The position numbers were made by a program, and so were the translations under genes. The notes below the pieces were generated by a model. It had not been told where the DNA came from and made no database searches. It saw only the letters and a list, made by a program, of their open reading frames with translations. From positions 1 to 64,000 of the IMG/VR virus record IMGVR_UViG_3300017917_003822: 64,000 nucleotides of DNA. One strand, written 5' to 3'. Shown piece by piece: positions 40,254-60,024 of the stretch; position 1 is the first letter of the stretch, and the number at the start of each line of letters is the position of its first letter.

Positions 40254-40733
40254 ATGAAACACATAATCCCAATAAACGAATTTGATAGTAATGCATTTGG
40301 AGACACCTACGGATATGGTGGAGCTAATGGCGTACTTAAAATAAACTATAAGCCCTTCAGCGATCTTTCAGTTTCTGTTGGACCTGACCCTAATGTTGAT
40401 AGGACTGTAAAGGGATCTGAATTTCAGTTAGGTGATGTTATAATTGCTGAACCGTTGCATTCTAAGAAAAAAGTCATTGGTGTTATAGTTAGATCATTTA
40501 GAAACCCGGACAATCAGCAATATAGATATTTCATTCAAGTTTATAATAAAGGTAAAAAAACGGAGAGAGTTATCGAGGTCAAATCTAATACTGCCAAATT
40601 TGCGGAAGGTGGAGATCACGGAAACATGGAGACTATTTCTAAATATAAAAACAATGAGATACCAAGTTCTGCTTTCAATTCAAAAACAGTTTATAGTTCG
40701 AATGAACTTGGTTTAGAAACTACGGGAGGATAA
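40254..40733 (+). CDS. Hypothetical late protein with capsid-targeting-like leader
   Basis: GATAAATA at 40241, then MKHIIPINEF; start at 40254 preferred over 40203. Confidence 0.65.
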   Translation: MKHIIPINEFDSNAFGDTYGYGGANGVLKINYKPFSDLSVSVGPDPNVDRTVKGSEFQLGDVIIAEPLHSKKKVIGVIVRSFRNPDNQQYRYFIQVYNKGKKTERVIEVKSNTAKFAEGGDHGNMETISKYKNNEIPSSAFNSKTVYSSNELGLETTGG

Positions 40734-40757
40734 TTTTTATCCGGAACTAATTCCGCT

Positions 40758-41690
40758 ATGTATGATACAAAGAATAAAGGTATTCTTATGGTATCAGGAA
40801 ACAGCAATCAAAACATTTCTTATATTGGACTTCCCAAGAGAAGCATAAAGGGTGATTTTACCATCACCTCCTATGATGATATGTTGGCTCTTATCTTGGA
40901 TGTCTGTACGATTAACTCTGGACTTATGGCAAAAACCATATGTCTGGACGTAAATGAATTGAATCTATCACCATCTTTTTTTGATGACACAATAGAGGAG
41001 GAAAATCCCAATATATCAGAAAAAATAAATGAAATAAACTCTCTGATAAATAAAAATTCTCTAAGAATTTGTTTTTTTGTCGGTAAGGATTATTTTCTGG
41101 GTAGTCAATTAGAGCATGTTAAAAACAACACAGTATCCTTGCTCAATATACTTGGATCCATATTAGATCTTCTGGGAGTTAATTATCCTTCCATTATAGT
41201 TAGAGTAGGATCTGCTTACGGCAACAGAAAGGTAACCATGAAATCTTTTTGCGAGAGAATTTCCCTATTAGATAAATCAGCGTCGAATAAGCTTTGCGTT
41301 ACCAATGACGAGAAACCAAGTCTTTTTTCAATAACGGATCTTTTATCTGGTATTTATTATGAATCCGGGATTCCACTTTGCTTTAGATCCTTACCCCATC
41401 AATTTAATGACGGAGGTCTGAGTTTCAGAGAAGCTCTTTTTCTTTCCAGTTCAACCTGGAAATCCGAACATAAGCCATTTTTCATACATGCAGAATCTAG
41501 CGAAATAAATGAACATGGAATCTCACTTTCTCCGATTCCTTCTTCTTTACTAACTAGAAGAATTCCAACTTTTGGTTTAGATTGTGATATTATCATAGAT
41601 TCACCTCTCGGAGAATCCGCTTATATTGATTATATGAAGGTTCATAAATCTCTTCCTCCGGTTGTTATAAATAAAATTTCCAAGAAATAA
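40758..41690 (+). CDS. UV-damage endonuclease UvsE-like TIM-barrel protein, degenerate active site
   Basis: IIVRVGSAYG, LCVTNDEK, ALFLSSSTW, PFFIHAES; the start may be 40788. Confidence 0.6.
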   Translation: MYDTKNKGILMVSGNSNQNISYIGLPKRSIKGDFTITSYDDMLALILDVCTINSGLMAKTICLDVNELNLSPSFFDDTIEEENPNISEKINEINSLINKNSLRICFFVGKDYFLGSQLEHVKNNTVSLLNILGSILDLLGVNYPSIIVRVGSAYGNRKVTMKSFCERISLLDKSASNKLCVTNDEKPSLFSITDLLSGIYYESGIPLCFRSLPHQFNDGGLSFREALFLSSSTWKSEHKPFFIHAESSEINEHGISLSPIPSSLLTRRIPTFGLDCDIIIDSPLGESAYIDYMKVHKSLPPVVINKISKK

Positions 41691-41739
41691 TTTTTATTTT
41701 CCGACTTTCTCGATTATATTTACAGAAAAATAAATAAGC

Positions 41740-42441
41740 ATGTTTACTAAGGATACCATACAAAATTTTCTATATTTCGATGTTGAAACTGCATCTCTTT
41801 ACCCATCACTCGATGAAATGTATAAAGAAAACTATAGATTATTTCACCTTTGGAAAAAGAGAGAGGAGTATTATAAAGGGGCTTATCCAAAGTTAGCTGA
41901 TTTGGATCCTGATGAAATATACAATCAAAAAGCAGGATTGGAACCAGAGTTTTCTAGAGTTGTTTGCGTTACATTTGGCTCTTATAGCGACGACGGCGAA
42001 AAGAGATTCATGTCATTCTCAGGTGAAGATGAGGTTGACATTCTAACTAAAAGTAACAAGGTTCTAAATAATGCTATGGTCAAAAATTGGAAATTGTGTG
42101 GCCATAATATAAAGGGATTTGATGTTCCATGTCTAGGTAAGAGAATGATATACAATGGAATAAATCCATCACCCAATCTAAGAACATGGGATAAAAAGCC
42201 GTGGGAGATGCCCTACGTTGACACTTCAGAGATTTTTTCCTTTGGTAGCTGGATTCATCAAAAATATTTAAGTTTGGATCTTTTGTCTTGTTCTCTGGGA
42301 ATACAATCACCAAAGGATGATCTTGATGGATCCAAAGTTAATTCCACTTATTGGATAGAAAAAGATTATGAAAAAATAGCAACATATTGCGAATCTGACG
42401 TTAAAACCGTAATGGATGTCATGGAAAAAATATGTTTTTGA
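41740..42441 (+). CDS. DEDD 3'-5' exonuclease (PolB-exo-like)
   Basis: FDVET, GHNIKGFD, YCESDV. Confidence 0.88.
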   Translation: MFTKDTIQNFLYFDVETASLYPSLDEMYKENYRLFHLWKKREEYYKGAYPKLADLDPDEIYNQKAGLEPEFSRVVCVTFGSYSDDGEKRFMSFSGEDEVDILTKSNKVLNNAMVKNWKLCGHNIKGFDVPCLGKRMIYNGINPSPNLRTWDKKPWEMPYVDTSEIFSFGSWIHQKYLSLDLLSCSLGIQSPKDDLDGSKVNSTYWIEKDYEKIATYCESDVKTVMDVMEKICF

Positions 42442-42466
42442 AGTAAATAAAAAACACTAATACATT

Positions 42467-42505
42467 AAAAGCTTTTCTCGATATATAGAGAAAAGCTTTT
42501 TTTTT
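42467..42505 (+). terminator. Terminator hairpin whose loop is the late promoter motif
   Basis: AAAAGCTTTTCTC-GATATATA-GAGAAAAGCTTTT followed by a T tract. Confidence 0.75.
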
Positions 42506-42506
42506 A

Positions 42507-43322
42507 GTGGATACAGTATTACAATTTACGGAATTTTTAAATAACAGGAATAGCTTACTCAACGAAAGGGAAATAAACCCGTTCTATCACGATGAGTTGA
42601 ATCCGGTTTTTTGGACAAAGAAAAAGGATAGATCTGGTAACGATAAATGGGTCTTTGATCAGAGAGTAAGAAGGAAGTTGCTTCGCATAGCTAAGGAATT
42701 TTTTAGTGAATTTGAAAATATCCTGAAGGAAAAGGATATAGTTGATGTTCAGCTTACTGGGTCTCTAGCTAATTATAACTACACTGATTTCTCGGATCTT
42801 GACGTTCATATCATAGTCAATCTTAAGGGCATTGATGATGATAATCCCCAAATACTTAAAAAAGCCATAGACGGAGTAAGATTTGCATGGAATTTAAGAC
42901 ATGATATAACCATTAGAGGATATGACGTTGAATTGTATATACAGGATAAAGACGAACCCCACACAGCATCGGCTCTTTTCTCTTTACAGGATAATGAATG
43001 GATAAAATCTCCAATATATGATCCACCTGCTGTGGATGAGAGAGACGTTGAGAAAAAATACAACGGTATAGTTGCCGACATTGAACAGTTACATTCGAGA
43101 TTAATGGTCGATTCTATATTACCAACCAACGCTAGACAACTTTATAAAAGATGCATAAAACTTAAAACTAAGATCTTCAAGATGAGAAAAGAAGGTTTAG
43201 CCAAAGGTGGTGAAATGTCGATAGGAAATTTAGCTTTTAAAAAGCTCAGAAATGAGGGATATATAGAAAAATTGATAACTATCATATCAAAGTCATACGA
43301 CAAGATTTACACAGAAAAATAA
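42507..43322 (+). CDS. Pol-beta superfamily nucleotidyltransferase
   Basis: LTGSLANYNYTDFSDLDVH (GS...DxD), third acidic residue in YDVELY. Confidence 0.8.
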   Translation: MDTVLQFTEFLNNRNSLLNEREINPFYHDELNPVFWTKKKDRSGNDKWVFDQRVRRKLLRIAKEFFSEFENILKEKDIVDVQLTGSLANYNYTDFSDLDVHIIVNLKGIDDDNPQILKKAIDGVRFAWNLRHDITIRGYDVELYIQDKDEPHTASALFSLQDNEWIKSPIYDPPAVDERDVEKKYNGIVADIEQLHSRLMVDSILPTNARQLYKRCIKLKTKIFKMRKEGLAKGGEMSIGNLAFKKLRNEGYIEKLITIISKSYDKIYTEK

Positions 43323-43330: not shown

Positions 43331-45940
43331 ATGATTATATTATTACCCAAGAAGGCTGAATATAAGATAGGTGAGGATTTCCCCTTTTTAACTGTCCCTC
43401 TAGAGATGGAAAATTCAGAAAATGCATCATTTGAGGATTTCCAATGGTGGTCAACTTCAGAGGATTTTCAGAAATGGCTAAAGAATAATCCTAGAGAATG
43501 GGTAGCTGATTCTGAGAATATGCAAAAATATGGTGATTTAACATCATATCTTAAGGAAAATTACGGGTTAAATATCGATCAATTGGACGTTGTTATTAAT
43601 GAAGAAACTGGTGTGGTTTCGTTTAGTGATTTTTCCAAACTGAATGAGCAGACTTCAGGTAAAGCTGATGAGGATCCAAAATACAGAGAAGCAATAAAAT
43701 TTCACTTTGCATACAATAAACTTAGATCCGAGGGTAAAATTGATGAAACTTTAAGTCCTACTGAAATTCCGGTTGGAAGTGATAAAGCAATTTTTGTTTG
43801 CGGCGAAGACCCAAATACCGGAGATAACATTTTAGAAACTTTAAAAGCAGTTAGAGCAACTGGTTTTAGTAAAACCAGCAGCGATTCTAAGATCACTTTA
43901 TTGAAAGTTTCGGAAATGGTACCCGGAGGTCCTATAGCTGATGATGAAACTGCTGAGGGTCTAACTCAAAGAATTATACAGGACGCATCAATTCTTGCTG
44001 CAATGGGAGGAGCTGGTATAGTTCTTTTCGGAGCTCTTAAATTAGCAGGAAGTGCTTGGGCAGGTAACAGACTACTAAAAACCATATCAGGATTTACTCC
44101 GGCTGGAAAGGCGGCGGCTCAAGCTTCTAAGGGAGCTGGATGGATGAGTAAATTTAAATCTTATTCTAGTGCTGGTATAAAGAGTCTATGGGGAACTGCT
44201 AAAGATATGGCTTTGCTTAAAAACACTAGAACTGTGGGCTCTGCGGTAGCTAGAGGAGCCAGAGGAGCCAAAGCAGCATACACTTTGGGTAAAGTTGGAC
44301 CAAAGGGTGCACTAAAAGCTTTTGGTAAAGGTCTAAGTAGAGGAGCTACTCAGGGAGGAGCTAAATTGATTCCTTTTGTCGGTGAGGTTCTGATGGTTGT
44401 TGATGCTGTTGGATCTACTTGGAACTGGTTTAGCGATAAACAGGCACCTAAATACACGGAGGTTAAGGAATTTGCCCATAATGAGATGGACCCTAAGAAA
44501 CTTCCTATTGGCGTTCCTATTACTATTTGTTGGTCTCAGCCAGCTGGTGGTGGATGGGGAAGTGTTACTAGTTTCTTATTCAATAACGAAACCAGAACAA
44601 CCGCTGAATTCATAAAAATTGCGGACAAGAATAACTATTCCATTCTTATATTAACTCAGGTTAACTCTAAAGCTGTGCAGAAACAAATAGCCGAACACGA
44701 TTTGGTTTTGATTGCTCTTGATAATAATGATATCGTAAATGATCAGGGAGGATTTCTAAACACGGTGGCAAGAGTTTTTGATAACGAGGATCTTGATTTT
44801 AAAATATCATATGTTGATGGTATATCTAAAATAGCAACTATTTTTAATTTTCAGGGAATGTGCGACTGGAGCGTTTTAGAGGAAGCTATGCAAAATGCAT
44901 CAGATCAGCTCATAGTATCTGACACGAGTGCTCCTGCAACTTATGAGTTCTATTATGAGGATTCTGAAGATAATATAATTAATGTATCGGGTAGACTTAT
45001 GACCGATGAGGAATTAAGATCAACATCTCAATCAGATATAGAGAAAATATTCCTACCCAAGGATGACAAAACCCCATACGGTACCAATCCGGGTGAAAAA
45101 TCGAAAGATTCTAAGAATGAAAGTGAAAATTTAGTAGGCTATAACTTACTCGTCAATGAATCCGGTGTGATAACAAATTTTGGTGACTTTAATAGGAGAT
45201 TGGATTCAATCGATCCAGATCAGATTAATGAAAAAGAGGGATCAGGTGATCAGATAAAACTTGATCGGGATCAATTATCCGGACCTGCTAAGGTTGCAAT
45301 CTATTGGGTAACTGACAGAGAATATGCTGATCCGGATCTTAGAAAATATAAAGCTGGTTTATTTACAAACTTTACGATAGAACCTAAGGATTATGATGCT
45401 AAGAAGGGTCAATCCATAGAAGTGGAGGTTAATACTGTTAATGAGGATATAGAAAATCCAAAAAGAGGTATTTACACATTCAAGAAAGTTAAGGATGAAG
45501 ACAATAAGAAGGAGGAAGATGGTAAAATCGTAAAAGTAACAAAACCTAAAACCGAAGAGGATGACAAAGTAACAGCTCAGGATTCGGGTACTAGCGTATC
45601 TGATGATTACTATATCAAGGTTGATCCTAAGGACGTCCAGATCAAGGATAGAAGAAGTTCCACGGTAATTAGGGATAATTCCGTAACTGGTGGGATAAAT
45701 TTAATTGACAAATTCCTTACAGATAAAGAGAAGGAAGTATTGGGTATACAAGATTGGAAAGCTATTACTTTCGCTAAAGCTCTACAAGACAATAGAGGAG
45801 ACGTAGTTGAAGTTAAGTTAAAGAACAGATTTGCAGCTTTCGGTGATAAAACAAGAAAATATAGAGTTACTGATGGAGAATCTTTCCAGATAGCTAAGAA
45901 TTTCGCTTCTGAGGTTGAAGAAAGAATAAAATATGAATAA
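43331..45940 (+). CDS. Large putative internal virion/ejection protein
   Basis: GATATATA at 43258; Gly/Ala-rich hydrophobic region; internal SFSDFSKLNE motif. Confidence 0.55.
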   Translation: MIILLPKKAEYKIGEDFPFLTVPLEMENSENASFEDFQWWSTSEDFQKWLKNNPREWVADSENMQKYGDLTSYLKENYGLNIDQLDVVINEETGVVSFSDFSKLNEQTSGKADEDPKYREAIKFHFAYNKLRSEGKIDETLSPTEIPVGSDKAIFVCGEDPNTGDNILETLKAVRATGFSKTSSDSKITLLKVSEMVPGGPIADDETAEGLTQRIIQDASILAAMGGAGIVLFGALKLAGSAWAGNRLLKTISGFTPAGKAAAQASKGAGWMSKFKSYSSAGIKSLWGTAKDMALLKNTRTVGSAVARGARGAKAAYTLGKVGPKGALKAFGKGLSRGATQGGAKLIPFVGEVLMVVDAVGSTWNWFSDKQAPKYTEVKEFAHNEMDPKKLPIGVPITICWSQPAGGGWGSVTSFLFNNETRTTAEFIKIADKNNYSILILTQVNSKAVQKQIAEHDLVLIALDNNDIVNDQGGFLNTVARVFDNEDLDFKISYVDGISKIATIFNFQGMCDWSVLEEAMQNASDQLIVSDTSAPATYEFYYEDSEDNIINVSGRLMTDEELRSTSQSDIEKIFLPKDDKTPYGTNPGEKSKDSKNESENLVGYNLLVNESGVITNFGDFNRRLDSIDPDQINEKEGSGDQIKLDRDQLSGPAKVAIYWVTDREYADPDLRKYKAGLFTNFTIEPKDYDAKKGQSIEVEVNTVNEDIENPKRGIYTFKKVKDEDNKKEEDGKIVKVTKPKTEEDDKVTAQDSGTSVSDDYYIKVDPKDVQIKDRRSSTVIRDNSVTGGINLIDKFLTDKEKEVLGIQDWKAITFAKALQDNRGDVVEVKLKNRFAAFGDKTRKYRVTDGESFQIAKNFASEVEERIKYE

Positions 45941-45976: not shown

Positions 45977-45984
45977 GATATATA
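45977..45984 (+). promoter_or_regulatory. Late promoter motif GATATATA (protease-capsid operon)
   Basis: Intergenic exact copy. Confidence 0.78.
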
Positions 45985-46010
45985 AGAAACATAAAAAAGA
46001 AGATATAAAA

Positions 46011-47960
46011 ATGCCAACAACTCAAAAATTGAACGAAGATTTGGTCTTTATTCTTGAAAGACAGAACACAATTCTCGAATCTAAGAAGACAGATTCTGAA
46101 GAGTATGTCTTAGAAGGTACTGCTGCTGTTTTCGGAAAAGAAAATAATAACAACAGGATCTATGAAGAGGCTGAATATTTACCTCATTTAAATTACCTTA
46201 AAGACAAAATAGCTCAGAAAAGGTTAGTTGGTGAATTAGATCACCCTGAGAAATTTGATGTCTCATTAAAGAACATCTCACATATCATTACTGACCTTAG
46301 CTATGATAAGCCGAGCAGAGAAATCAAAATTAAGGTGAGACTTCTGGACACCCCAGCGGGTCAAATTGCTAAAAAGCTAGTTGATGCTGGAGTTCCTTTA
46401 TCGATATCGTCTAGAGCTGCTGGAGCAGTTGGTAACGATAAGAAAGTACAAATCAAAAAAATATTCACGTACGATTTAGTTGCAGACCCTGGATTTCAGG
46501 ATGCACAATTAGAAAGAGTATATGAGAGTGCAGGTTATACATTTGAAGAATTCTTTCAAATGAGAAACAATAGCATCTTATCTGATCTAGTTTGTGTAAA
46601 TGAATCATTAGGTCTAGAAAATGAATCTTCAGTGAAGATATATAAAGTTGAAAACAACGAAGAATTCAACAATCTCGTATCAAAATCAGACAAAAATAAA
46701 ACAATCCTCATGGAGAATAATGAATTTGTTACTGCGAAAGAACTTAACGAATATTCAATTTTCTTGAAAAAAGAAATGGATTCGATGAAGACTACATTGG
46801 CAGAAATTAAAGAACAGAAAGAAAAAATAAGCGAATCAGCTGGAGAATCTAACACATCTGAGTTAGAAGAAAGAGTAGCAAAACTTGAAAAGTACTCTGA
46901 ATATCTTGCTGAAAATTTGGACAATGCTATTAAATACGGTGAGTATTTAGCAGAGAATCTTGATTCAAGCATCAGTTATAGCAAATACTTAGCTGAAAAC
47001 CTGGATAAAAATATTTCTTATTCTAAATATTTAGCTGAGAATGTAGATAAATCTATCTCTTATTCTGAATATGTTGCTGAGAGCGTTGATAAGTCTATCG
47101 AGTATTCCAAATATCTTGCTGAAAAAGTAGATCAGAACATTCAATATTCTGAGTATTTAGCAGAGAATTTAGATAAAGGTATTGCTTACAGCGAATATCT
47201 AGGAGAAAACTTAGATAAAGGTATTGCTTATACTGAGTATGTTGCTGAAAAATTAAATGATGGCATTGAATATTCTGAGTATTTAGGTGAAAACTTAAAT
47301 AAAGCGATCCAATATTCTGACTATTTAGCAGAAAATCTTAACAGAGGATTAGATTATTCTGAATATTTAGCAGAAAAAGTTAAAAGATCTATCTCTTACA
47401 GTGAATATATAGCAGAAAACGTTAACAACGGAATAATGACTAATAAGGAATCTTTAAGAGAAAGTGTTGATCTTTCAGCTCAAGCAGGTTTAAATGAATC
47501 TGGATTTGCTGGAGATTACAATAATCTTTCATCACAAATTGATAGTTTGATAGAATCAGTTAAAACACAAAAAACTGAATCAAATATAAACGAAGCTTCT
47601 AGATCAATAGAAGCACCAGCCGACACACAAAAGGCAGAAGCTCTTAACGAAGAGGAGAACACTAACAAAACTGGTCTTAAGTTTATCGACGAAATGCCTG
47701 AAGAATATGCACAGGTTTGGGAATCACTTAATGAGGGACATAAGCAATCAATTATTGCTCAAAGTAACTTCTATAGATTGGATACACCATACCAAATCAA
47801 AAACTTCTGGTCAACACGTCAACTTGGAACTAAAACAGTTGGAGTTCAAAAATTAGACGAGAGCGAAAACGTAGCTCAGACAAATGCAACACAAGCTTAT
47901 TCAAGTGATTACATGAATTATATAGCTTCTGCATTAGAGCAAAAATTCGTAAGACGATAA
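46011..47960 (+). CDS. gp21: Prohead protease (gp21-like) fused to a repeat-containing scaffold
   Basis: NNNNRIY, GELDHP, LDTPAG, ISSRAAG, YDLVADPGF; C-terminal 14-aa repeats. Confidence 0.92.
   Translation: MPTTQKLNEDLVFILERQNTILESKKTDSEEYVLEGTAAVFGKENNNNRIYEEAEYLPHLNYLKDKIAQKRLVGELDHPEKFDVSLKNISHIITDLSYDKPSREIKIKVRLLDTPAGQIAKKLVDAGVPLSISSRAAGAVGNDKKVQIKKIFTYDLVADPGFQDAQLERVYESAGYTFEEFFQMRNNSILSDLVCVNESLGLENESSVKIYKVENNEEFNNLVSKSDKNKTILMENNEFVTAKELNEYSIFLKKEMDSMKTTLAEIKEQKEKISESAGESNTSELEERVAKLEKYSEYLAENLDNAIKYGEYLAENLDSSISYSKYLAENLDKNISYSKYLAENVDKSISYSEYVAESVDKSIEYSKYLAEKVDQNIQYSEYLAENLDKGIAYSEYLGENLDKGIAYTEYVAEKLNDGIEYSEYLGENLNKAIQYSDYLAENLNRGLDYSEYLAEKVKRSISYSEYIAENVNNGIMTNKESLRESVDLSAQAGLNESGFAGDYNNLSSQIDSLIESVKTQKTESNINEASRSIEAPADTQKAEALNEEENTNKTGLKFIDEMPEEYAQVWESLNEGHKQSIIAQSNFYRLDTPYQIKNFWSTRQLGTKTVGVQKLDESENVAQTNATQAYSSDYMNYIASALEQKFVRR
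46890..47435 (+). repeat. 13 x 42-nt (14-aa) coding repeat, consensus xYSEYLAENLDKxI
   Basis: Counted from the translation. Confidence 0.92.
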
Positions 47961-47990: not shown

Positions 47991-49709
47991 ATGAAATTGA
48001 TTAACGAACAAGAAATCTATGATACCTGGTCTCCGATTATCGAGAGCAAAGCAGGAATCACTGATTCAAGCAAAAAAGAGTGGTTAACTAAATATTGTCA
48101 CTATCACTCATTAAACGAGTCTGCTGGTGCATACCAATCATTAGGAGTTGTAAACGGTATGGGTGCTGTAGCTCCACCTGCTTTCCCTGGTGCTAACATC
48201 GGTGGTAATGCATTCTCAACTGGTGCTAATGCAGGTTTCTATAACCAAACTTGGCAAGGTTCAGGAGATAAATTCCCTTCATTGTTACCTTTAGCTATTC
48301 AGGTAGCTGCTAAAACAATCGGGTTTGATATCGTTCCTGTTATCCCTATGTCAGGTCCAACTGGTATCTTATCTTACTTAGATTATGTATACGCAGGTGG
48401 TAAATTAGCTGGTGCTACTTCAGCTGCTTCTGGAGACAGTTTATCTAAAGCTCCTGCAATGATTAAATTCCCTGTTTACCAAGGATCATCATCTGGTGCT
48501 ACTGGTGCTACAGCTGGAACTTTCACTGTTGGACAATCTTACACAGTAACTAACGCTGGTACATTAACTTTAACTTTCGTTGGACTTTCTAGAATTGATG
48601 GTTTCCCAATCTTCGAAATCACAAACATCACTGATGGTTACAACGTAGCTGCTATCGTAAATGGTACTTCTGTACAAGTTGGTTCTACTGGTATGTATAC
48701 TGGTACTTCAGCTTCATCTAACGGTTACGTTGCTCAGTTAGTTAAAGCTTTAGAAGATCACATCCAAGGATTCTCTGGTGCTGGTTTCAACAACGACGCT
48801 GATTGGCAAGGTCCTTATGTTGATGGTACTAAAACTTACAACCCAATGTTAAGAGGTGTTGGTGAGTCTAACTACTACAACTCAATGGGTCTTTCTACTT
48901 TCACTAAGTTCGTAGAAGCTGACACTTTCCAAGTTGCTGCTTCAGTTACAACTGAGCAAATCCAAGACCTTAACAAACAATTCGGTATCGACGTTATCTC
49001 AATGATCGAGAACGCATTAGTTAATGAGGTTTCACAAGCAATTAACAAGCACATCCTTTCAAGAGCATTTGCTTTAGGTTGGTCTAACCACGTTCAATTC
49101 AACAATGTTGAAAACCAAAACTTGAACTTGAACTTAGTACTTAACGGTTCTGCTGGTACTACTGCATCTTACGTTAACAAGTCTGATGTAAATGTATCTA
49201 TGGCTATCCCTGCAGGTCCTGCATCAACTTCTTTCGAGAACTTATCAACTTTACAAAGAAGATTATTCTCTAGAATCCTTGCAGCTGCAAACGTAGTAGC
49301 TAACAGAGGTAGAAGAGGTCCTGCTAACTTCATCGTAACAAACGCTGCAGTTGCAAGTGCACTTCAAGATATCTCTCAGTTCACTTTCGCTCCATTCTCT
49401 AACACTTTAACTCAAAATAACGGTACTTTATACCCTGTAGGTTCTCTTGCTGGTATGACAGTTTACGTAGATCAGAACATGAACTACTCCGATACTAGAG
49501 TATTAGTTGGTAGAAAAGGTGGTGATGATGAACCAGGTCTTAAATTCATGCCTTACATGATGGCAGAGTCAATTCAGACAATCTCTGAAGGTACAATGTC
49601 ACCTAAGATCGCAGTTAAATCTAGATACGCTCTAGTTGAAGCTGGTATGTTACCTGAAACTATGTACTTAACATTCTATGTTAATGTACCTGCTGGAGGT
49701 TTAGCATAA
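47991..49709 (+). CDS. gp23: Major capsid protein (T4 gp23-like)
   Basis: WSPIIE, VPVIPMSGPTG, RRGPANF, FMPY, PKIAVKSRY; strongly biased codon use. Confidence 0.96.
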   Translation: MKLINEQEIYDTWSPIIESKAGITDSSKKEWLTKYCHYHSLNESAGAYQSLGVVNGMGAVAPPAFPGANIGGNAFSTGANAGFYNQTWQGSGDKFPSLLPLAIQVAAKTIGFDIVPVIPMSGPTGILSYLDYVYAGGKLAGATSAASGDSLSKAPAMIKFPVYQGSSSGATGATAGTFTVGQSYTVTNAGTLTLTFVGLSRIDGFPIFEITNITDGYNVAAIVNGTSVQVGSTGMYTGTSASSNGYVAQLVKALEDHIQGFSGAGFNNDADWQGPYVDGTKTYNPMLRGVGESNYYNSMGLSTFTKFVEADTFQVAASVTTEQIQDLNKQFGIDVISMIENALVNEVSQAINKHILSRAFALGWSNHVQFNNVENQNLNLNLVLNGSAGTTASYVNKSDVNVSMAIPAGPASTSFENLSTLQRRLFSRILAAANVVANRGRRGPANFIVTNAAVASALQDISQFTFAPFSNTLTQNNGTLYPVGSLAGMTVYVDQNMNYSDTRVLVGRKGGDDEPGLKFMPYMMAESIQTISEGTMSPKIAVKSRYALVEAGMLPETMYLTFYVNVPAGGLA

Positions 49710-49778: not shown

Positions 49779-49804
49779 GAACATAAAAAACAAATTGTTT
49801 GTAA

Positions 49805-52093: not shown

Positions 52094-54580
52094 ATGATGA
52101 ACAAGAATCCGTATTTAAATAACCTAGTAGCAAGATCTCTTTTTGAGAATCACTACGAAAAAATTTTTGAGAACGAGAAGGTCGATGCCTTATTAAATAA
52201 AATTTCAGATAACGCTCTTGATGCATTCAAAATATTAACTTTTGATCTTGCACCGTCCAGAGACAGAAATCCTGATATTATGAGGGTTAAATTATCTGAC
52301 ATTAGCAATTCTGATAATGTTAAGGAGCTTACAGCCAAACTTCTTGATTATGCTGATGATAATGATCTCCTTAATCCGAAATACGCAGAGACAAAAAGAC
52401 TTTATTTAGAGGCTCTTAAAAAATTATCAGCTGCTCTAAATAGAGCTGTTGAGATAGGTAAAGATAAGGACGAGGTTATATTAAAAGCTTTTAAAAAATC
52501 TCCACTTAAACTTCAGAATACATTAGATAACATAGCTAAGGATGCTGAAGAAGCTCTGAAAGCTAAAAAGAAAAATGAATCTGAGGATTTTATCGGAAAT
52601 CCTATTTTTGAATCTATATTCACCGGCTATAGAGGTAGAGTTGAGAATTTGAAAAAGTTACTAGCTAATCTAATTACTTCTTCCGAAGGTAAGGATCAAA
52701 GAAACGGGTATGGTAGGGACTGGAAAAGAACCTTCATAGATCTTGATGAGAAAAGGAAAGTCCTGGATACCACAAGAGGAGGTTTCGGTGAGAAGGATAA
52801 AAAAGCTCTTGATGAGCTTGAGAAACAGGTTGAAAAATTCCAGGATGATTTTAATAAGTCTATAATTCAAGCAGCAAACAGATCTCTTCAGAATTTGGAG
52901 GACGATGAGGAAGTTTATACTTCTTATTCTGATGTTACTGAATTGACAAACACTGCTCTTGACCTTCTAACAAGAGCAAAAGCACAGTATTCTATAACTG
53001 CCAAAGAAATAAAAGAAGATCAGATAGCAGAAGAAAATACCGTAATTAAATCGGTATTTCCACTTAAGAGAGGTGACGCTGATACTGATAAAAAAATCAA
53101 AGGTAGCGGACTTATCTATGCTATACAAAGTGCACTTGTGAATGGTATACCTTCCGCTGGGAAGCTGATAAGATCTAAAGGAGGTCCTAATGGTAAATAT
53201 GGACCAGCAACAACCGCTGTAGTTTCGACCTTACAAAAAATAATTGGTAATAAAAATACCAATGGTGAGATGGATAAGGTTTTATTGGATGATATAATTT
53301 CTTCTGATTGGGTGTCTGAAAAAGACAAAAAAGCTATACAGAAATCTCTGGAGGTGGTTAGAAACAAAATGAATGAAAGCACCAGTCCAGTTATTAGCCT
53401 TTCAGATTTTGGTAAAATTTACGAGGGAAAAATTGTAATAAATAATGCAGATTTCGAGAAAGAGCTTGATGTCCAATATAAAAATATTGGAGGTTCTCTA
53501 CCTGGTAAAAAAGAAACTCACGAATCACCAAAGAGCGGAGGATCATCATCCGGTGTTAAGACTCTGGCCAAAAATTTAAGATCTGCTTATAATTTAAAAA
53601 TAGAGGACGAGGATTTTCTTAAGCAAGATGGGTCGCTAAGATCAGTGTACAGTCCACAGTTTATAAAAGCTTGGAACTCAACATTGGAAAAAATAATAGC
53701 AGATAAAAAAGTTGAGGAATATTCATACTTTTTCTTTTCCGGTGGGGTCTATAATATAAATCTATCATCGAGCTCACTAAAAAATCCATGCAATTGGAAT
53801 AAATGGGCTGACGCAAGAGGAATAAAAACATTAGGTAATGATGATGCTACTGACTTTATTGAAAACTACTTAAAGGGTTGGAAAACTTTCGGTATGATCA
53901 GACCTGGATTTAGATATGATGGAATCAGATCTTTACTTAAAGAAAATGCACAGAACGATTCTCTTGATTTAAGTTCAGCATACGAGATGATGGACACCTC
54001 AATCAAAAATAAAAGTATTCCTTTTATTGATTTTGATAACTTAAAGGGTGATATATCTAAAGCATTCGGTTTAGCTTTACAGAAAGGTGAAAAAAATCCG
54101 GATTTAGGTAAAGAGGAATTCGTTGCAATAAACAATTTCCTAGTTATGGTAGCCAATGCTATTACTTTCGACGGTAGCAAATTTATAAGTTGTCTTAAAT
54201 GGATACATGATAATCTTTTGGGAGAGTCCACAGCTAAGAGAATAAAGAGAGATCAGATGTTTTCGGTTACTAATGAGGATAAAGACAGCGGAAAAATGTT
54301 AGGCTTTGACGGTTCAAGTATAGTTTCGTCAACTTCCAAAAAGATAGCAGATAAGAAGCTAAATAAAAAGTCCGATGTTAGTGAGGATCTTCCTGGATTA
54401 AAGGTTCTTGCAGAGACTGGTCAGGACTCACAGATCAAAGAAGCTCTTGCTAAGAACTGTTATTATATGGGAGCTGACATATACCCTAGTATCAAAATAC
54501 ATTTAAAGAGAATGAATGCTACCAATTTTGAACAAGTTCCTCAGACTTCTCCTTTTAAATGTAAGGAATTTAAAGTCTAA
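52094..54580 (+). CDS. Large virion-associated protein with a peptidoglycan-binding-like motif
   Basis: PLKRGD...AIQSAL...NGKYGPATTAVVSTLQ resembles PG_binding_1; ATG at 52094 preferred. Confidence 0.6.
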   Translation: MMNKNPYLNNLVARSLFENHYEKIFENEKVDALLNKISDNALDAFKILTFDLAPSRDRNPDIMRVKLSDISNSDNVKELTAKLLDYADDNDLLNPKYAETKRLYLEALKKLSAALNRAVEIGKDKDEVILKAFKKSPLKLQNTLDNIAKDAEEALKAKKKNESEDFIGNPIFESIFTGYRGRVENLKKLLANLITSSEGKDQRNGYGRDWKRTFIDLDEKRKVLDTTRGGFGEKDKKALDELEKQVEKFQDDFNKSIIQAANRSLQNLEDDEEVYTSYSDVTELTNTALDLLTRAKAQYSITAKEIKEDQIAEENTVIKSVFPLKRGDADTDKKIKGSGLIYAIQSALVNGIPSAGKLIRSKGGPNGKYGPATTAVVSTLQKIIGNKNTNGEMDKVLLDDIISSDWVSEKDKKAIQKSLEVVRNKMNESTSPVISLSDFGKIYEGKIVINNADFEKELDVQYKNIGGSLPGKKETHESPKSGGSSSGVKTLAKNLRSAYNLKIEDEDFLKQDGSLRSVYSPQFIKAWNSTLEKIIADKKVEEYSYFFFSGGVYNINLSSSSLKNPCNWNKWADARGIKTLGNDDATDFIENYLKGWKTFGMIRPGFRYDGIRSLLKENAQNDSLDLSSAYEMMDTSIKNKSIPFIDFDNLKGDISKAFGLALQKGEKNPDLGKEEFVAINNFLVMVANAITFDGSKFISCLKWIHDNLLGESTAKRIKRDQMFSVTNEDKDSGKMLGFDGSSIVSSTSKKIADKKLNKKSDVSEDLPGLKVLAETGQDSQIKEALAKNCYYMGADIYPSIKIHLKRMNATNFEQVPQTSPFKCKEFKV

Positions 54581-56713: not shown

Positions 56714-56766
56714 CATCGAATATTCGGATGTTCTTTGGATATATAGTTTAAAATAAAAATCAAAGA

Positions 56767-57411
56767 ATGTCAAATATAAAAAAATTCGAAGATTTTCCGT
56801 ATGATCCTTCACCGATTAACGAGGGATTTCTTGATGATGTTACTAGCATTATAGGAAAAATGGTTCCTTTCTTGGGAACTGGTTTTATCAAAACAATCAA
56901 GCAGAAATTAGCGGCTACTCTTTTAGAAAAGCTAGGTATAATGGAAAATACAGCAGCTTCTACGATAGTTCAGGAGTTGGTTGATTCGATAGAGGTTAAG
57001 GAAATGCCTGGATTATTAACTGGGGAAAATGCAAATGCAGAGTTTCTTGCACCAAGATTGGCACAGGCAGTTCAGGAATATATCCAAAGAAAAGGTTTCG
57101 ATTCATTATACGCCCCATTTGGTATAGATCCAAATGGATGGTTAGCCTCAACTATAAGAGAATCGTTCCAGGAGGAAGTTGGCAAAGAGAGATTGACTAA
57201 CTTCTTTTTAAAAGCTCTTGGTAGTGAACCTGTTGGTAGAGATTTAATAGGTAAACTTGATGATAAAAGCAAGGACCAATTTAAAGATGCCTTATCTCAG
57301 CAGTTAGCTAAAGAATACCCGACAAAGGTTAAATCTGAAGGTGGATCAAAAGGTTTTATGGATACTGTAGGTTCCATTTGGGATAGCTTTTTGGGAGGAT
57401 CTAATAAATAA
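56767..57411 (+). CDS. Putative internal head protein
   Basis: Late promoter at 56738; leader MSNIKKFEDF...INE. Confidence 0.6.
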   Translation: MSNIKKFEDFPYDPSPINEGFLDDVTSIIGKMVPFLGTGFIKTIKQKLAATLLEKLGIMENTAASTIVQELVDSIEVKEMPGLLTGENANAEFLAPRLAQAVQEYIQRKGFDSLYAPFGIDPNGWLASTIRESFQEEVGKERLTNFFLKALGSEPVGRDLIGKLDDKSKDQFKDALSQQLAKEYPTKVKSEGGSKGFMDTVGSIWDSFLGGSNK

Positions 57412-57424: not shown

Positions 57425-57763
57425 ATGAATCAACAAAACGTAGCAAAAAGGGAAATTCTGGATTATAAAGAATTTCTGGGTAAAGTTCACGATGATACTT
57501 ATAAACCATTTTCGGCTGAAAATCAAACTCCGCAACCAGAAAAAACTGGTCTTTCTAAGATAACCAGAGAGCCTGCATTTGATTATGCTGGGTATGCTGA
57601 TTCTGTTTTTGCCGGCACATCTAAGGTTGACGTTCCTGGATATAGAATTTCGATAGGGGATAAATCTGGTATGGCTGATGCTTCCGGTGCTAGTGGAATA
57701 TTTAACATGGGTGCAGCAAATGAATCTGAAGAATTTACAATTAAGAAATTAAACGATTTTTAA
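57425..57763 (+). CDS. Hypothetical protein
   Basis: ILDYKEFL near the N-terminus, IKKLNDF at the C-terminus. Confidence 0.6.
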   Translation: MNQQNVAKREILDYKEFLGKVHDDTYKPFSAENQTPQPEKTGLSKITREPAFDYAGYADSVFAGTSKVDVPGYRISIGDKSGMADASGASGIFNMGAANESEEFTIKKLNDF

Positions 57764-57799: not shown

Positions 57800-57805
57800 G
57801 TGAAC

Positions 57806-58531
57806 TTATGATACGTATTCTATAAATTTTTCTTTGGCTAGCTTGTAGATTTCAGAATTCTCATCGAAGTTTTCGTATATCTCTATAACGTGTAGATCTG
57901 GTGATATCTTTTTTTCCGCAGAAAATTCTTCCAATATCTCGTGGTAAATGTACTCGTAATTTAGGGAGAAAGTCTGATTTTTTATGTGTATTTTTTTAAG
58001 AACACAAATTTGTTTGTCGCCTTCCTTTGTTTTCATGATAACCGAACCCTGCCAATAGTAGGATATTATTTTATCAGTAATCATATTTCTGACTATCAAT
58101 ATTCCGGAATTACTCTTTTCGTTGATTTCTAATAAATTTCCAGGATTTACCCTAAATATTCTTATTTTTGATTCTTCTTCCTTCAATATGTCTAAGCAAA
58201 CCTCTGAATATTCATATAAAGTTTCCAGCGAGGATTCAACTATTTTCGTGATTGTATCCTTTTCGATTTCCGATAATTTTTCGTATTTGAATTTTTTAAT
58301 AAGATCTTTTTCCTCATTTTTGAGTTGTCTTATTATGGACTGGTTGATTTTTTTAGTCTCTTTAAATTCATTCAGTATCTTAACTATATTCGAAACTGAT
58401 CTCAGTATAGAATAGCAATTTTCAGCATCTAAATTTTTGCTAATTGATTTTAGATAATCTAATAAGATGTATTCCTTGTGCTCCGGGTCTATTGGATCTT
58501 TTATGAACCAAATTGGACTTATATTCTTCAT
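57806..58531 (-). CDS. Hypothetical protein (only convincing minus-strand gene)
   Basis: 241-aa ORF filling the gap and ending at the bidirectional terminator; WFIKDPIDPEHKEYILLDYL. Confidence 0.8.
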   Translation of the reverse strand: MKNISPIWFIKDPIDPEHKEYILLDYLKSISKNLDAENCYSILRSVSNIVKILNEFKETKKINQSIIRQLKNEEKDLIKKFKYEKLSEIEKDTITKIVESSLETLYEYSEVCLDILKEEESKIRIFRVNPGNLLEINEKSNSGILIVRNMITDKIISYYWQGSVIMKTKEGDKQICVLKKIHIKNQTFSLNYEYIYHEILEEFSAEKKISPDLHVIEIYENFDENSEIYKLAKEKFIEYVS

Positions 58532-58619
58532 ACTCCAACTTTTTAAAAAACATGCTTTCCTTATATATTTGAAATATAAAAATGTTACAAAAGGATATAT
58601 AGAATAAAAAAAAAGAAGA

Positions 58620-59069
58620 ATGTCAAGAATATACGACTACACAGCGTTTTCAGGAAATTCGAGCAAGGGTGGAAATACCAATGATTATTCTTTTGGTATT
58701 GATATGAAATATGTTGATATTGATCTTTTCGGTAGACCTGAAGAATATGAGGACATTAGCGATGCCAAGGCTTTTATTGAATATTCTGTTGATTTGGTGG
58801 TAAAAAAAGGAGGGATCGACGGGATGATCTTTAATGTAAATTCAATAGAGTTAGAATTTGAGGTTGATGATTATCCGAATGGATCTAAGGAATTTGATAT
58901 TGATCTTATACCAGGAAAAACTGTAGATTACAGTCAGATAAAAACAGAGATTCATGAAAGTCCAATCCCAACTTATCCTGATAAAATCGAGATAAACATG
59001 AATAAATCCACAGATCCCAAAAACTTTGACATAACCGTTTATTTTGGAAATGATGTCAGATATAGATAA
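58620..59069 (+). CDS. Hypothetical late protein
   Basis: GATATATA at 58594; acidic, beta-rich. Confidence 0.65.
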   Translation: MSRIYDYTAFSGNSSKGGNTNDYSFGIDMKYVDIDLFGRPEEYEDISDAKAFIEYSVDLVVKKGGIDGMIFNVNSIELEFEVDDYPNGSKEFDIDLIPGKTVDYSQIKTEIHESPIPTYPDKIEINMNKSTDPKNFDITVYFGNDVRYR

Positions 59070-59070
59070 A

Positions 59071-60024
59071 ATGAGAGTTTTAAATTTCAAAGATTTCATA
59101 TTAAATGAATCTGATTCCGGGGGTTACGGAATTCCCGACGTTAAGAATATCATGGATGATGGTTATGAATTAACTGCGGAGGATTTTGTTGGTCAAAAAT
59201 CAACACCACCGGTGGGAAAAATATTGGTTGTTGATGATAGCAATAATTCACTAACCCTATCTTTCAGAGATAGATCAGGTAAGATGGACAGAAAGCTGAT
59301 GGTAGGTAAGGATTCCGTTAAATTCTCAAAGAATTCGGATGGGAACTATATAATAAAAATAGATCCAAACCTTAGATGGTTGAATACCGGTAACAATAGG
59401 GAAAATATAGAGGATTTTATAGAGGATCTGATAAATTGTAAATTGGATTCTGAGAATCATGAAAGTAGATTTATTGACGGTATTAAGGATGATGTTTATT
59501 TCATAATGGATATTCTTGGAATTCCTTGTGAAGTTTCAGATATTAAGAAAATAGAGGACAATAAATATGAGATTACTTTGGATAATGACATGGTGATTGA
59601 TGTTAAAAAGAGATCATCGGATGACCTTGTTGGTAATTTTGATATTTATAAAAAACATTCTGATGTTTATCCGTCCGTTACAATAAAGAGCGATTTAGGA
59701 AAGATGCATTTCAATTTCGATCAGGATAATCTTGATGGTAATGAGGAGGTTGAATCGGATATAACTGACGTAAGTAAAAATGATTACTTAAACTTCCTTC
59801 TTAAGAAATCACTTGGTTTAGAAACTACCGCCGACGAGGAAAGACTATATAATCACTTCTTAGAAGTTATAGATTCTAAAGATTGGGAATATTCTGAAAT
59901 AGACGAAGAGGAAAAAAAGGAGAGGGGTAGAAAAACTCAAAAATATATAAAGAAACTTAAGAAACTTGTATTATCATTCCTACCGGAAACTAAGATTCGT
60001 GAGATTTATCCTGATAAAAATTAA
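59071..60024 (+). CDS. Putative internal head protein
   Basis: Leader MRVLNFKDFILNES; start at 59071 preferred over 59044. Confidence 0.65.
   Translation: MRVLNFKDFILNESDSGGYGIPDVKNIMDDGYELTAEDFVGQKSTPPVGKILVVDDSNNSLTLSFRDRSGKMDRKLMVGKDSVKFSKNSDGNYIIKIDPNLRWLNTGNNRENIEDFIEDLINCKLDSENHESRFIDGIKDDVYFIMDILGIPCEVSDIKKIEDNKYEITLDNDMVIDVKKRSSDDLVGNFDIYKKHSDVYPSVTIKSDLGKMHFNFDQDNLDGNEEVESDITDVSKNDYLNFLLKKSLGLETTADEERLYNHFLEVIDSKDWEYSEIDEEEKKERGRKTQKYIKKLKKLVLSFLPETKIREIYPDKN

What the first reader, a model, noticed from the sequence alone, without database searches (positions are those of the whole stretch)
40254..60024. Family of late proteins with a T4-like capsid-targeting leader (predicted injected cargo)
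Seen: N-termini MKHIIPINEF (40254), MDTVLQFTEFLN..LLNE (42507), MKNIPSFSEF (49805), MTLNFKEWEKLNE (50949), MLSFNEFRLSE (51832), MSNIKKFEDF..INE (56767), ..ILDYKEFL (57425), MSRIYDYTAF (58620) and MRVLNFKDFILNE (59071). Internal copies occur in 43331 (VVSFSDFSKLNE, ITNFGDF) and 52094 (ISLSDFGKIYE). Most follow a late promoter motif. Known: T4 internal proteins carry MKTYQEFIAE-type leaders that gp21 cleaves after L/I-x-E. Inference: about ten otherwise unrelated proteins are packaged, processed and delivered with the DNA, a pool likely to include anti-defence or takeover factors.
Basis: partly seen in the sequence, partly recalled or inferred. Interest (0 to 1): 0.7.

Follow-up and report, generated by a model that had tools for sequence, protein, structure and literature searches.

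The report
T4-like capsid-address leader on many proteins
A 270-kb uncultivated jumbo phage puts the same short N-terminal tag, very like the peptide that phage T4 uses to load proteins into its head, on some 30-40 otherwise unrelated proteins, which probably marks the proteins it packs into the capsid and partly injects with its DNA.

Summary
The window is the first 64 kb of a 270,629-bp phage with a T4-type capsid protein, a T4 gp21-type head protease fused to a scaffold, and a gp55-like late sigma factor. About 30-40 of its roughly 364 genes start with M-K-x-[ILV]-x-x-[FY]-x-[DE]-[FW]. A variable linker follows, then [LIV]-N-E before S, A or G. The aromatic core sits at residues 4-10 in 24 genes against 5.5 expected (p 4e-9). 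Two related genomes repeat this. Orthologues keep both elements while the linker changes in length. Internal copies lie between two cleavage-like sites, and one aligns with the start of a separate gene in relatives. The tagged proteins are mostly unrelated in sequence. Most follow a GATATATAG promoter that also precedes the sheath, neck and protease genes.

In T4's MKTYQEFIAE, residues 4 and 7 target and residues 8 and 10 direct cleavage, with the same spacing. The 13 scaffold repeats (YSEYLAE) share this pattern.

The best reading is a capsid-targeting propeptide removed by the head protease. Packaging, cleavage and injection are inferred, not shown. The tagged genes in the window look like conserved head-core proteins. 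Tagged enzymes lie elsewhere in the genome.

The parts
42480..42488 (+). Late-type promoter motif GATATATAG, lying in the loop of a terminator-like hairpin (42467-42500) just upstream of 42507
42507..43322 (+). Leader-tagged nucleotidyltransferase. The leader is residues 1-20 (nt 42507-42566) and ends LLNE before R. The GTG start is conserved in relatives.
   Evidence: Pfam NTP_transf_2 and phrog_36119. Leader conserved in about 45 orthologues. Virus-only NTase clusters.
43331..45940 (+). 869-aa protein with two internal leader modules, each lying between two h-x-E sites: residues 89-106 (nt 43595-43648) and 608-634 (nt 45152-45232). Predicted to be cut into three pieces.
   Evidence: No family match.
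45977..45985 (+). Late-type promoter motif upstream of the protease-scaffold and capsid genes
46011..47960 (+). Head maturation protease (gp21/S77 type, N-terminal about 200 aa, with LNE at residues 7-9) fused to a scaffold. The scaffold carries 13 tandem 14-aa repeats of the form x-x-I-x-YSEYLAENLD (residues 291-476, nt 46881-47438) and further LNE sites.
47991..49709 (+). Major capsid protein (Gp23 family). The N-terminal 50 residues are nearly invariant and hold LINE(3-6), IIE(16-18) and SLNE(40-43) before SAGAY. The predicted propeptide is residues 1-43 (nt 47991-48119).
   Evidence: Terminator-like hairpin 49728-49759. RNA contigs stop there.
49771..49779 (+). Late-type promoter motif for the run 49805-54580
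49805..50947 (+). 380-aa charged protein; leader residues 1-18 (MKNIPSFSEF...LLE before K)
50949..51839 (+). 296-aa charged protein; leader residues 1-13 (MTLNFKEWEKLNE before A)
   Evidence: both aromatics, P3 and P1 kept in all of 53 orthologues
51832..52089 (+). 85-aa protein; leader residues 1-11 (MLSFNEFRLSE before A)
52094..54580 (+). 828-aa protein with an internal leader module at residues 426-444 (nt 53369-53425). In loci L072 and L073 the second half is a separate gene that starts with this module. There is a weak peptidoglycan-binding-like motif at residues 362-395.
   Evidence: Weak leads.
56738..56746 (+). Late-type promoter motif for 56767-57763
56767..57411 (+). 214-aa helical protein; leader residues 1-19 (MSNIKKFEDF...INE before G). 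F10 and E19 are two of only eight invariant columns among 29 orthologues.
   Evidence: RNA contigs in run X15.
57425..57763 (+). 112-aa protein with the conserved ILD[FY]xxF at residues 12-18. Doubtful member, because no cleavage-like site follows.
58620..59069 (+). 149-aa protein with the conserved RIYDYxxF. Doubtful member. A late-type promoter motif lies at 58594.
59071..60024 (+). 317-aa acidic protein; leader residues 1-13 (MRVLNFKDFILNE before S)
40254..40733 (+). 159-aa protein with the conserved MKHIxxINEF. This is a variant core (Ile in place of the first aromatic) with no clear site after it. Doubtful member.
29487..29846 (+). gp55-like late sigma factor, the likely reader of the GATATATAG promoters
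   Evidence: E 4.8e-6, 34% identity to T4 gp55

Best explanation
The motif is a T4-type capsid-targeting propeptide, a short address tag of usually 11-22 residues (most often 13).

Anatomy:
- After Met-Lys the tag has a hydrophobic residue, then two aromatic residues three positions apart with an acidic residue between them.
- A linker of free length follows, then [L/I/V]-N-E.
- On a helix the conserved residues at positions -3, 0, +3 and +4 relative to the first aromatic fall on one face.

Proposed mechanism (inferred):
1. Late in infection the tagged proteins are made from GATATATAG promoters, together with the protease-scaffold and capsid proteins.
2. The aromatic core docks the protein onto the assembling scaffold core. 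The 13 tandem repeats of the scaffold carry the same [FY]-x-E-[FY]-[LIV]-x-E pattern, so the tag may work by imitating one scaffold unit.
3. Once the shell closes, the gp21-type protease cuts after the Glu. The tag leaves, the scaffold is chopped at its own LAE and LNE sites, and the mature proteins stay in the head.
4. Large proteins with internal tags are cut into two or three pieces.
5. A subset of the cargo then enters the host with the DNA. Candidates are the two SLT lytic transglycosylases, the phosphatase, the ATP-grasp enzyme, the nucleotidyltransferase and the adenylate kinase.

Shown here: the motif, its position, its conservation, its modularity, its promoter association, and the presence of the T4-type machinery.

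Inferred: docking, cleavage, presence in the virion and injection.
For: - Position-specific enrichment in three genomes.
- Logo from 35 proteins: the first aromatic is at residue 7 in 20 of them, the position three residues before it is I, L or V in 30, P1 is E in 32, P2 is N in 18, and P1' is mostly S, A or G.
- In four orthologue families (27-53 sequences, mean column identity 41-55%) the second aromatic is kept in 100%, P1 Glu in 78-100% and P3 in 81-100%, while linker length varies.
- Gene fission and fusion: the internal module of 52094 aligns with the N-terminus of a separate gene in L072 and L073.
- Internal modules lie between two sites: 10 found against 1.4 expected. The hits are in 43331, the scaffold repeats, and two other proteins.
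- The same h-N-E site follows the invariant capsid-protein N-terminus, and LNE sits at residues 7-9 of the protease. T4 gp21 has LIE-9 (PMC9026906).
- T4 machinery is present.
- In T4, CTS residues 4 and 7 target and residues 8 and 10 process, and gp21 cuts after L/I-x-E. The T4 record gives MKTYQEFIAE before A for IPII and IPIII, and MKTFKEF...ITE before A for IPI.
- The tag is grafted in front of complete enzyme folds. The adenylate kinase domain starts at residue 27, and its tag is kept in two relatives. Nearly all full-length entries among the 120 listed metagenomic homologues of the SGNH/phosphatase protein carry it.
- The promoter is shared with the sheath, neck and protease genes.
- In phage PAU, which infects a Bacteroidota host, ten head-region genes share MKT[LI]xxL[YF]E(xKLNE). 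They include the scaffold protein and two genes that the depositors call 'internal capsid protein'.
- RNA contigs cover the 56767-57763 unit and the capsid gene, but not the flanking metabolic genes.
Against: - There is no proteomic or structural evidence that any tagged protein is in particles or is cut.
- The complex prediction gave no answer.
- An adenylate kinase is an odd thing to package.
- Some tagged proteins have no convincing site after the core (127027, 161741, 244876).
- The run 49805-52089 has no RNA contigs in run X15, where the capsid mRNA is deep. If that reflects expression, these are not abundant core proteins.
- The scaffold domain has no significant similarity to T4 gp22, and the leader is too short to prove homology with the T4 CTS.
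- PTm1, another relative with a protease-scaffold fusion, shows no such family in the 67 kb examined.
Confidence: 0.68

Rival explanations
1. The tag is a head-protease propeptide or docking motif of internal head-building proteins only (scaffold, core, inner-body-like). The proteins help to build or fill the head and are degraded or stay inside. Little or nothing is delivered as an active effector.
For: - The tagged genes next to the capsid gene are conserved, syntenic, charged proteins.
- The scaffold itself carries the pattern 13 times.
- In PAU the scaffold protein bears the tag.
Against: Tagged enzymes with complete catalytic folds have no obvious building role: SLT (twice), adenylate kinase, ATP-grasp, phosphatase and NTase. 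A few tagged small genes are variable between relatives, as the T4 internal proteins are.
Confidence: 0.2
2. The N-terminal motif serves another purpose unrelated to the capsid. Examples are binding to a phage chaperone or assembly factory, regulated turnover by a protease, or oligomerisation. The h-N-E after it would then be incidental.
For: - Cleavage and packaging are unproven.
- The adenylate kinase and the ATP-grasp enzyme would be ordinary cytoplasmic enzymes.
- Some members lack a site.
Against: - The core and the h-x-E site co-occur and are both conserved.
- Internal copies are bracketed by two sites.
- The same site follows the capsid protein's invariant N-terminus.
- Late promoters are shared with virion genes.
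- The pattern corresponds one to one with the mapped T4 CTS.
Confidence: 0.1
3. The pattern is an artefact: chance, AT-rich codon bias after start codons, or an ordinary paralogous gene family.
For: The genome is 35% G+C, and K, N, I, F, Y and E have AT-rich codons.
Against: - p is 4e-9 in this genome and the result repeats in two others.
- Synonymous codon use at the conserved positions equals the genome average.
- Internal copies exist.
- Only 2 of 43 candidates pair up beyond the leader.
Confidence: 0.02

Closest known systems
[quoted passage not shown]
   Same: - A short N-terminal tag starting M-K, with two aromatic residues three apart and an acidic residue between them.
- The tag ends in [L/I]-x-E before a small residue. 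The linker may vary, as in IPI.
- It is shared by unrelated proteins.
- The phage has a gp21-family protease, a gp23-family capsid protein, and late -10-only promoters with a gp55-like sigma factor.
   Different: - Three extra residues, including a conserved Ile, Leu or Val, precede the first aromatic.
- P2 is nearly always Asn.
- About 30-40 carriers, compared with the few T4 proteins known to carry a CTS (IPI-III; Alt also has a short propeptide).
- Most carriers are conserved across relatives rather than hypervariable.
- Internal tags bracketed by two sites occur in large proteins.
- The protease is fused to a scaffold made of 13 tag-like repeats.
- The host is probably a Bacteroidota bacterium.
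Sphingomonas (Sphingobacterium) phage PAU head region, GenBank JQ362498: gp142 and gp154 annotated 'internal capsid protein'
   Same: - A jumbo phage of a Bacteroidota host with a related capsid protein (32% identity).
- Ten neighbouring head-region genes share an N-terminal tag ending in L-[YF]-E and/or KLNE before A or S.
- The capsid protein has KLNE before S.
   Different: - The tag sequence differs (MKT[LI]xxL[YF]E, with one aromatic).
- The protease and the scaffold are separate genes.
- The basis of the depositors' annotation is not given, and no paper on it is in the searched library.
Propeptides of head and ejection proteins of giant phages phiKZ, 201phi2-1 and SPN3US
   Same: Many internal head proteins are processed after Glu by a gp21-related protease. 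Some are ejected. Propeptides are thought to target proteins into the prohead (PMC5694885).
   Different: - Those propeptides are mostly 100 residues or longer and have no shared short motif.
- The site is S/A/G-x-E rather than L/I/V-N-E.
- Those phages have a different capsid lineage and a virion RNA polymerase.
Ejection (internal virion) proteins with a lytic transglycosylase domain, such as T7 gp16 (from my own knowledge)
   Same: Two tagged paralogues carry an SLT domain. This fits a wall-cutting protein that leaves the head with the DNA.
   Different: T7 gp16 is a large core protein of a podovirus and has no cleaved address tag. Here the SLT proteins are 245-272 aa, and the phage is a myovirus with a sheath.

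Membership tests
T4-type CTS / internal-protein system | The phage encodes a gp21-family (Peptidase_S77) prohead protease with catalytic His and Ser | tested here: met
   Pfam PF03420 and phrog_207. BLASTP aligns GELDHP and ISSR with T4 GELNH(85)P and VS(140)SR. The catalytic role of those T4 residues comes from my own knowledge.
T4-type CTS / internal-protein system | gp23-family major capsid protein with an N-terminal propeptide ending in h-x-E | tested here: met
   PF07068, E 2e-42. SLNE before SAGAY at residues 40-43 is invariant in 55 relatives. Cleavage itself was not tested.
T4-type CTS / internal-protein system | A short N-terminal leader whose residues i and i+3 are aromatic (T4 Tyr4 and Phe7, needed for targeting) | tested here: met
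   Logo of 35 leaders. T4 sequences from the record. Mapping of residue functions from PMC9026906. Pattern only; targeting was not tested.
T4-type CTS / internal-protein system | The leader ends in L/I-x-E followed by a small residue | tested here: met
   32 of 35 leaders have such a site. P3 is L, I or V in 27 and P1' is S, A or G in 17. The T4 rule is quoted.
T4-type CTS / internal-protein system | The leader is shared by proteins unrelated in their mature parts | tested here: met
   All-against-all BLASTP of 43 candidates gives 2 pairs. The Pfam domains are diverse.
T4-type CTS / internal-protein system | Late expression together with the head genes | tested here: inconclusive
   There is a promoter association and a gp55-like sigma factor. 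RNA contigs cover one unit but not another. No time course is available.
T4-type CTS / internal-protein system | Proteins are physically in the head and the leader is removed by the protease | not testable with these tools
   This needs virion proteomics or reconstitution. The complex prediction gave no answer.
T4-type CTS / internal-protein system | Mature proteins are ejected into the host with the DNA | not testable with these tools
   Suggested only by the cargo types (SLT, phosphatase and others).
T4-type CTS / internal-protein system | Demonstrable sequence homology of the leader to the T4 CTS | tested here: inconclusive
   The shared pattern is only 7-10 residues, too short for statistics. 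The scaffold domain against T4 gp22 is not significant.
phiKZ/SPN3US-type long propeptides | Propeptides of about 100 residues or more and an S/A/G-x-E site | tested here: not met
   Leaders are 11-36 residues with a mode of 13, and P3 is L, I or V. The comparison is from PMC5694885.
Secretion signal peptide (Sec, Tat or lipoprotein) | A hydrophobic core of 10 or more residues after a basic N-region | tested here: not met
   The leaders are acidic and aromatic, with no hydrophobic run. This is read directly from the sequences.
Ordinary paralogous gene family | Similarity extends through the proteins | tested here: not met

The most novel reading that the evidence does not exclude
The tag is an ancient, portable capsid address shared from T4 to the huge phages of Bacteroidota, and it works by imitating one unit of the scaffold's tandem repeat. 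Reading it from sequence alone would then give the whole packaged proteome of uncultivated jumbo and huge phages. Here that is about 40 proteins, including an adenylate kinase, an ATP-grasp ligase, a protein phosphatase, a nucleotidyltransferase and wall-cutting enzymes that are delivered ready-made into the host. Large polyproteins would be cut at internal tags.
Probability: 0.3. Interest if true: 0.8.

Novelty: new variant of a known kind. Interest (0 to 1): 0.6.

Why it matters
If the tag does what its T4 counterpart does, a simple sequence rule predicts which proteins a whole clade of uncultivated jumbo and huge phages carries inside the capsid. This clade occurs in pond, lake, marine, wastewater, soil and salt-marsh metagenomes. 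For such phages no virion can yet be purified.

- The rule names concrete candidates for the first proteins to act in the host: a phosphatase, an ATP-grasp enzyme, a nucleotidyltransferase, an adenylate kinase and lytic transglycosylases.
- It suggests how cargo is recruited, namely by imitating a scaffold repeat. The partner of the T4 CTS within the core has, as far as I know, not been defined structurally.
- It offers a ready-made tag for loading foreign proteins into phages of Bacteroidota.

Tried and rejected
- **Complex prediction.** The protease-scaffold with a 24-residue leader gave no answer, which is no evidence either way.
- **Structure of the 56767 protein.** AlphaFold2 with 29 orthologues gave mean pLDDT 54.6, too poor for a fold search. 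The leader (residues 1-22) has pLDDT below 50.
- **Scaffold against T4 gp22.** BLASTP was not significant (E 0.12). I therefore treat the resemblance between 'EWLAEN' in gp22 and the repeat as anecdotal.
- **Other relatives.** In 67 kb of Tenacibaculum phage PTm1 there is no leader family, and the scaffold repeat is different. The Lak-C1 head region shows no clear leaders.
- **Solved structures.** Searches for 42507, 59071, g200030 and g201619 gave nothing useful.
- **Peptidoglycan-binding domain in 52094.** Only sub-threshold signals: Atlas score 0.80-0.83, Pfam 15.8 bits against a cut-off of 23, hhalign 41%. I keep it as a lead only.
- **Variable small tagged gene g263016.** No close relative was found in IMG/VR by pattern search.
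- **Sigma-70-type promoters.** There are fewer than in shuffles (57 against 76), so they do not explain the units.
- **Early promoter motif.** I looked for one in order to classify early genes. None stood out apart from GATATATA.
- **Rejected explanations.** Translation-initiation codon bias and an ordinary paralogue family.

Full report
**What the window is.** The window is bases 1-64000 of a single 270,629-bp contig. It is an IMG/VR virus record that CheckV rates 99% complete. It has 35% G+C and almost all genes are on the + strand.

The nearest public phages are uncultivated huge phages: LR756500 at 46% capsid-protein identity and the Lak phages at about 40%. More distant relatives are jumbo phages of Bacteroidota hosts, namely Tenacibaculum PTm1 and pT24, Flavobacterium MaF61, Chryseobacterium MA9V-1 and PAU. 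PAU's host is really a Sphingobacterium (PMC3738902). IMG/VR holds at least 185 related loci, with contigs up to 434 kb. Near-identical sequence occurs in pond, freshwater, marine, wastewater, soil and salt-marsh metagenomes.

**The head machinery is of the T4 type.**
- 47991-49709 is a Gp23-family capsid protein (E 2e-42).
- 46011-47960 starts with a Peptidase_S77 / phrog_207 protease. BLASTP aligns its GELDHP and ISSR with T4 gp21 His85 and Ser140.
- The rest of that protein is a scaffold with 13 tandem 14-residue repeats, x-x-I-x-YSEYLAENLD.
- Two T4-type portal paralogues lie at 30977 and 32577.
- The large terminase is at 12053 and the tail sheath at 13961.
- A gp55-like late sigma factor is at 29487.

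On my own 364 gene calls, [FY].[DE][FW] peaks sharply at residues 5-9: 15 hits in that bin against about 2 in other five-residue bins. The slightly wider pattern [FY].[DE][FWY] occurs at residues 4-10 in 24 genes against 5.5 expected (p 4e-9). With a following h-x-E site the count is 10 against 1.2.

The same test gives 24 against 6.2 in the 343.5-kb relative G002, and 35 against 7.6 in the first 400 kb of the 434.5-kb relative G003.

Relaxing the middle residue and curating by eye gives 43 candidates, eight of them doubtful. An automatic two-element rule gives 26. I therefore put the family at roughly 20-40 genes, not ten. Clusters lie at 118-127 kb and at 262-270 kb on the minus strand.

**The logo** comes from 35 proteins.
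- Consensus: M, K, N/K, I/L/V, L/K, S, F/Y, x, D/E, F, L/I.
- The first aromatic is at residue 7 in 20 of them.
- After 0-20 further residues comes P3 L/I/V, P2 N (18 of 32), P1 E (all 32), and P1' mostly S, A or G.
- The commonest predicted leader length is 13.
- Codon use at the conserved positions equals the genome average, so the constraint acts on the protein.

**Conservation and modularity.** Orthologues of the window's tagged genes occur in 25-65 of 80 related loci and in the complete genomes G002 and G003.

Across them the aromatic core and the terminal h-x-E persist, while the linker gains and loses residues. In four families with mean column identity 41-55%, the second aromatic is kept in 100% of sequences, P1 Glu in 78-100% and P3 in 81-100%. 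In the 56767 family, F10 and E19 are two of only eight invariant columns.

The internal copies are real modules.
- In 43331 both copies are conserved down to 25% identity, and each is preceded by another h-N-E site.
- In 52094 the internal copy aligns with the N-terminus of a separate gene in loci L072 and L073. That is a fission or fusion of genes at exactly the tag.
- A formal pattern 'site - core - site' finds 10 internal instances against 1.4 expected: two in 43331, six (non-overlapping) in the scaffold repeats, and one each in two other proteins.

Beyond the leader the candidates are unrelated. Two BLAST pairs were found among 43 proteins.

**The tag is grafted onto whole enzymes.**
- 42507: nucleotidyltransferase of a virus-only family.
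- g138700: adenylate kinase. The domain starts at residue 27, and the tag is kept in two relatives at 70-86% identity.
- g150676: RimK-type ATP-grasp enzyme.
- g219456 and g266378: SLT lytic transglycosylases.
- g191160: a protein that starts with a GDS motif, as SGNH hydrolases do (read by eye, not tested), and whose homologues JGI names as Tyr/Ser phosphatases. Nearly all full-length entries among the 120 homologues listed carry the tag.

**Promoter.** GATATATA is the most enriched 8-mer upstream of genes, found at 39 genes against 2 expected. Of the 84 [GA]ATATATA sites, 61 lie within 80 nt of a start.

The motif precedes the sheath, the neck protein, the protease-scaffold/capsid operon, and most tagged genes. 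The count is 27 of 41 curated candidates against 30 of 323 other genes. This list is biased because some members were noticed in the promoter table. The automatic set gives 15 of 26.

- promoter 42480, lying in the loop of a terminator hairpin, then 42507;
- promoter 43258, then 43331;
- promoter 45977, then protease-scaffold and capsid protein, then a strong hairpin at 49728-49759;
- promoter 49771, then 49805, 50949, 51832 and 52094, then a hairpin at 54605;
- promoter 56738, then 56767 and 57425, then a hairpin at 57771-57799;
- promoter 58594, then 58620 and 59071.

Tail and neck genes with the promoter lack the tag, so the tag is not a general feature of late genes.

In one metatranscriptome (X15, contigs more than 99% identical) RNA contigs cover the end of the scaffold gene and the capsid gene and stop at the hairpin. 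They also cover the 56767-57763 unit. They do not cover the flanking metabolic genes, nor 49805-52089. These are assembler contigs, so this is weak evidence.

**Comparison with T4, from data rather than memory.** The T4 record gives MKTYQEFIAE before A for IPII and IPIII, and MKTFKEF followed by 12 residues ending ITE before A for IPI.
- The review PMC9026906 states that targeting depends mainly on CTS residues 4 and 7 and processing on residues 8 and 10.
- An Asp at position 10 blocks processing but not targeting.
- gp21 cuts after L/I-x-E, and gp21 itself has LIE-9.
- The CTS sequence is confirmed in PMC8442874.

These positions map one to one onto the conserved positions here: aromatic, x, acidic, aromatic, L/I, x, E. 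IPI shows the same two-element plan with a linker. The protease here has LNE at residues 7-9. The invariant capsid-protein N-terminus carries LINE, IIE and SLNE before SAGAY.

**The link to the scaffold.** The seven-residue pattern [FYW]-x-x-[FYW]-[LIVM]-x-E occurs 37 times against 7.5 expected: 13 times in the scaffold repeats, 10 times at called N-termini (residues 6-9, plus one more if the start of 133021 is corrected), and the rest at about background level.

The same repeat (NISYSEY[LI]AENLDK) is kept in LR756502, whose capsid protein is only 32% identical and whose head region also shows such leaders. PTm1 has a different scaffold repeat and no leader family in the 67 kb I examined.

This suggests, but does not prove, that the tag enters the core by imitating a scaffold unit.

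**A cultured precedent.** In phage PAU ten genes around the portal, protease and capsid genes begin MKT[LI]xxL[YF]E, often followed by xKLNE before A or S. They include the scaffold protein and gp142 and gp154, which the depositors labelled 'internal capsid protein'. I found no paper in the searched library that describes this. I also found none that links a capsid-targeting sequence to huge or jumbo phages other than the phiKZ/SPN3US group.

**Verdict.** The most likely explanation is a T4-type capsid-targeting propeptide cut off by the head protease (confidence about 0.7).

The tagged genes in the window are conserved head-region genes that look like core, scaffold or ejection-apparatus proteins. 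The enzymes that could act in the host lie elsewhere in the genome. Nothing here shows packaging, cleavage or injection.

The finding is a new variant of a known kind. It uses the same principle as T4, in a distant lineage of uncultivated jumbo and huge phages, on a much larger scale, with internal excisable tags and a scaffold built of tag-like repeats.

Noticed in passing
window 30977-32572 and 32577-34202: Two adjacent full-length T4-type portal (Gp20) paralogues (Pfam E 8e-58 and 9e-66). A phage head normally needs only one portal gene.
   Followed up: no
window 46881-47438; L096 (LR756502) 17806 onward: The 14-residue scaffold repeat YSEYLAENLDK is kept almost letter for letter in a 642-kb huge phage whose capsid protein is only 32% identical. 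DNA-level hits to this repeat occur at up to 9 places in some huge-phage records.
   Followed up: partly
window 42467-42500: A terminator-like hairpin whose loop is the late promoter motif GATATATAG, followed by a T run and a conserved GTG start. Several other tagged genes have a hairpin, a T run and then the promoter (49728-49779, and upstream of 219456, 263957 and 266378). They therefore look like self-contained late cassettes.
   Followed up: partly
proteins P0071, P0076, P0105, P0108, P0111, P0116, P0120 (homologues of G000 191160-192569): Phosphatase homologues from other metagenomic phages start with a different shared N-terminal motif, MNLQENIxRIKxxM. This may be another lineage's address tag on the same cargo.
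   Followed up: no
G000 138700-139320 (L085:700-1320) and 150676-152133 (L085:12676-14133): A complete adenylate kinase and a RimK-type ATP-grasp enzyme each carry the leader and a late promoter. Both are unusual candidates for packaged enzymes.
   Followed up: partly
L145 (phage PAU, JQ362498) 2924-10608: Ten head-region genes of PAU, including the scaffold protein and two annotated 'internal capsid protein', share the leader MKT[LI]xxL[YF]E(xKLNE).
   Followed up: partly
window 34225-42441: Replication, repair and metabolic genes sit between the portal genes and the head genes. They include a PfkB kinase, an ATP-dependent DNA ligase, a clamp-loader-like AAA protein, a 5'-3' exonuclease, a UvdE endonuclease and a PolB-type 3'-5' exonuclease. 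None carries the leader.
   Followed up: partly
window 26842-29220: A 792-aa protein of unknown family behind two late promoter motifs holds one internal 'site - core - site' module at residue 409. It may be another processed head protein.
   Followed up: no
window 47991-52089: Near-identical sequence is held by metagenomes from pond, lake, marine, wastewater, soil and salt-marsh samples taken between 2018 and 2025. This phage lineage is therefore geographically and ecologically widespread.
   Followed up: no
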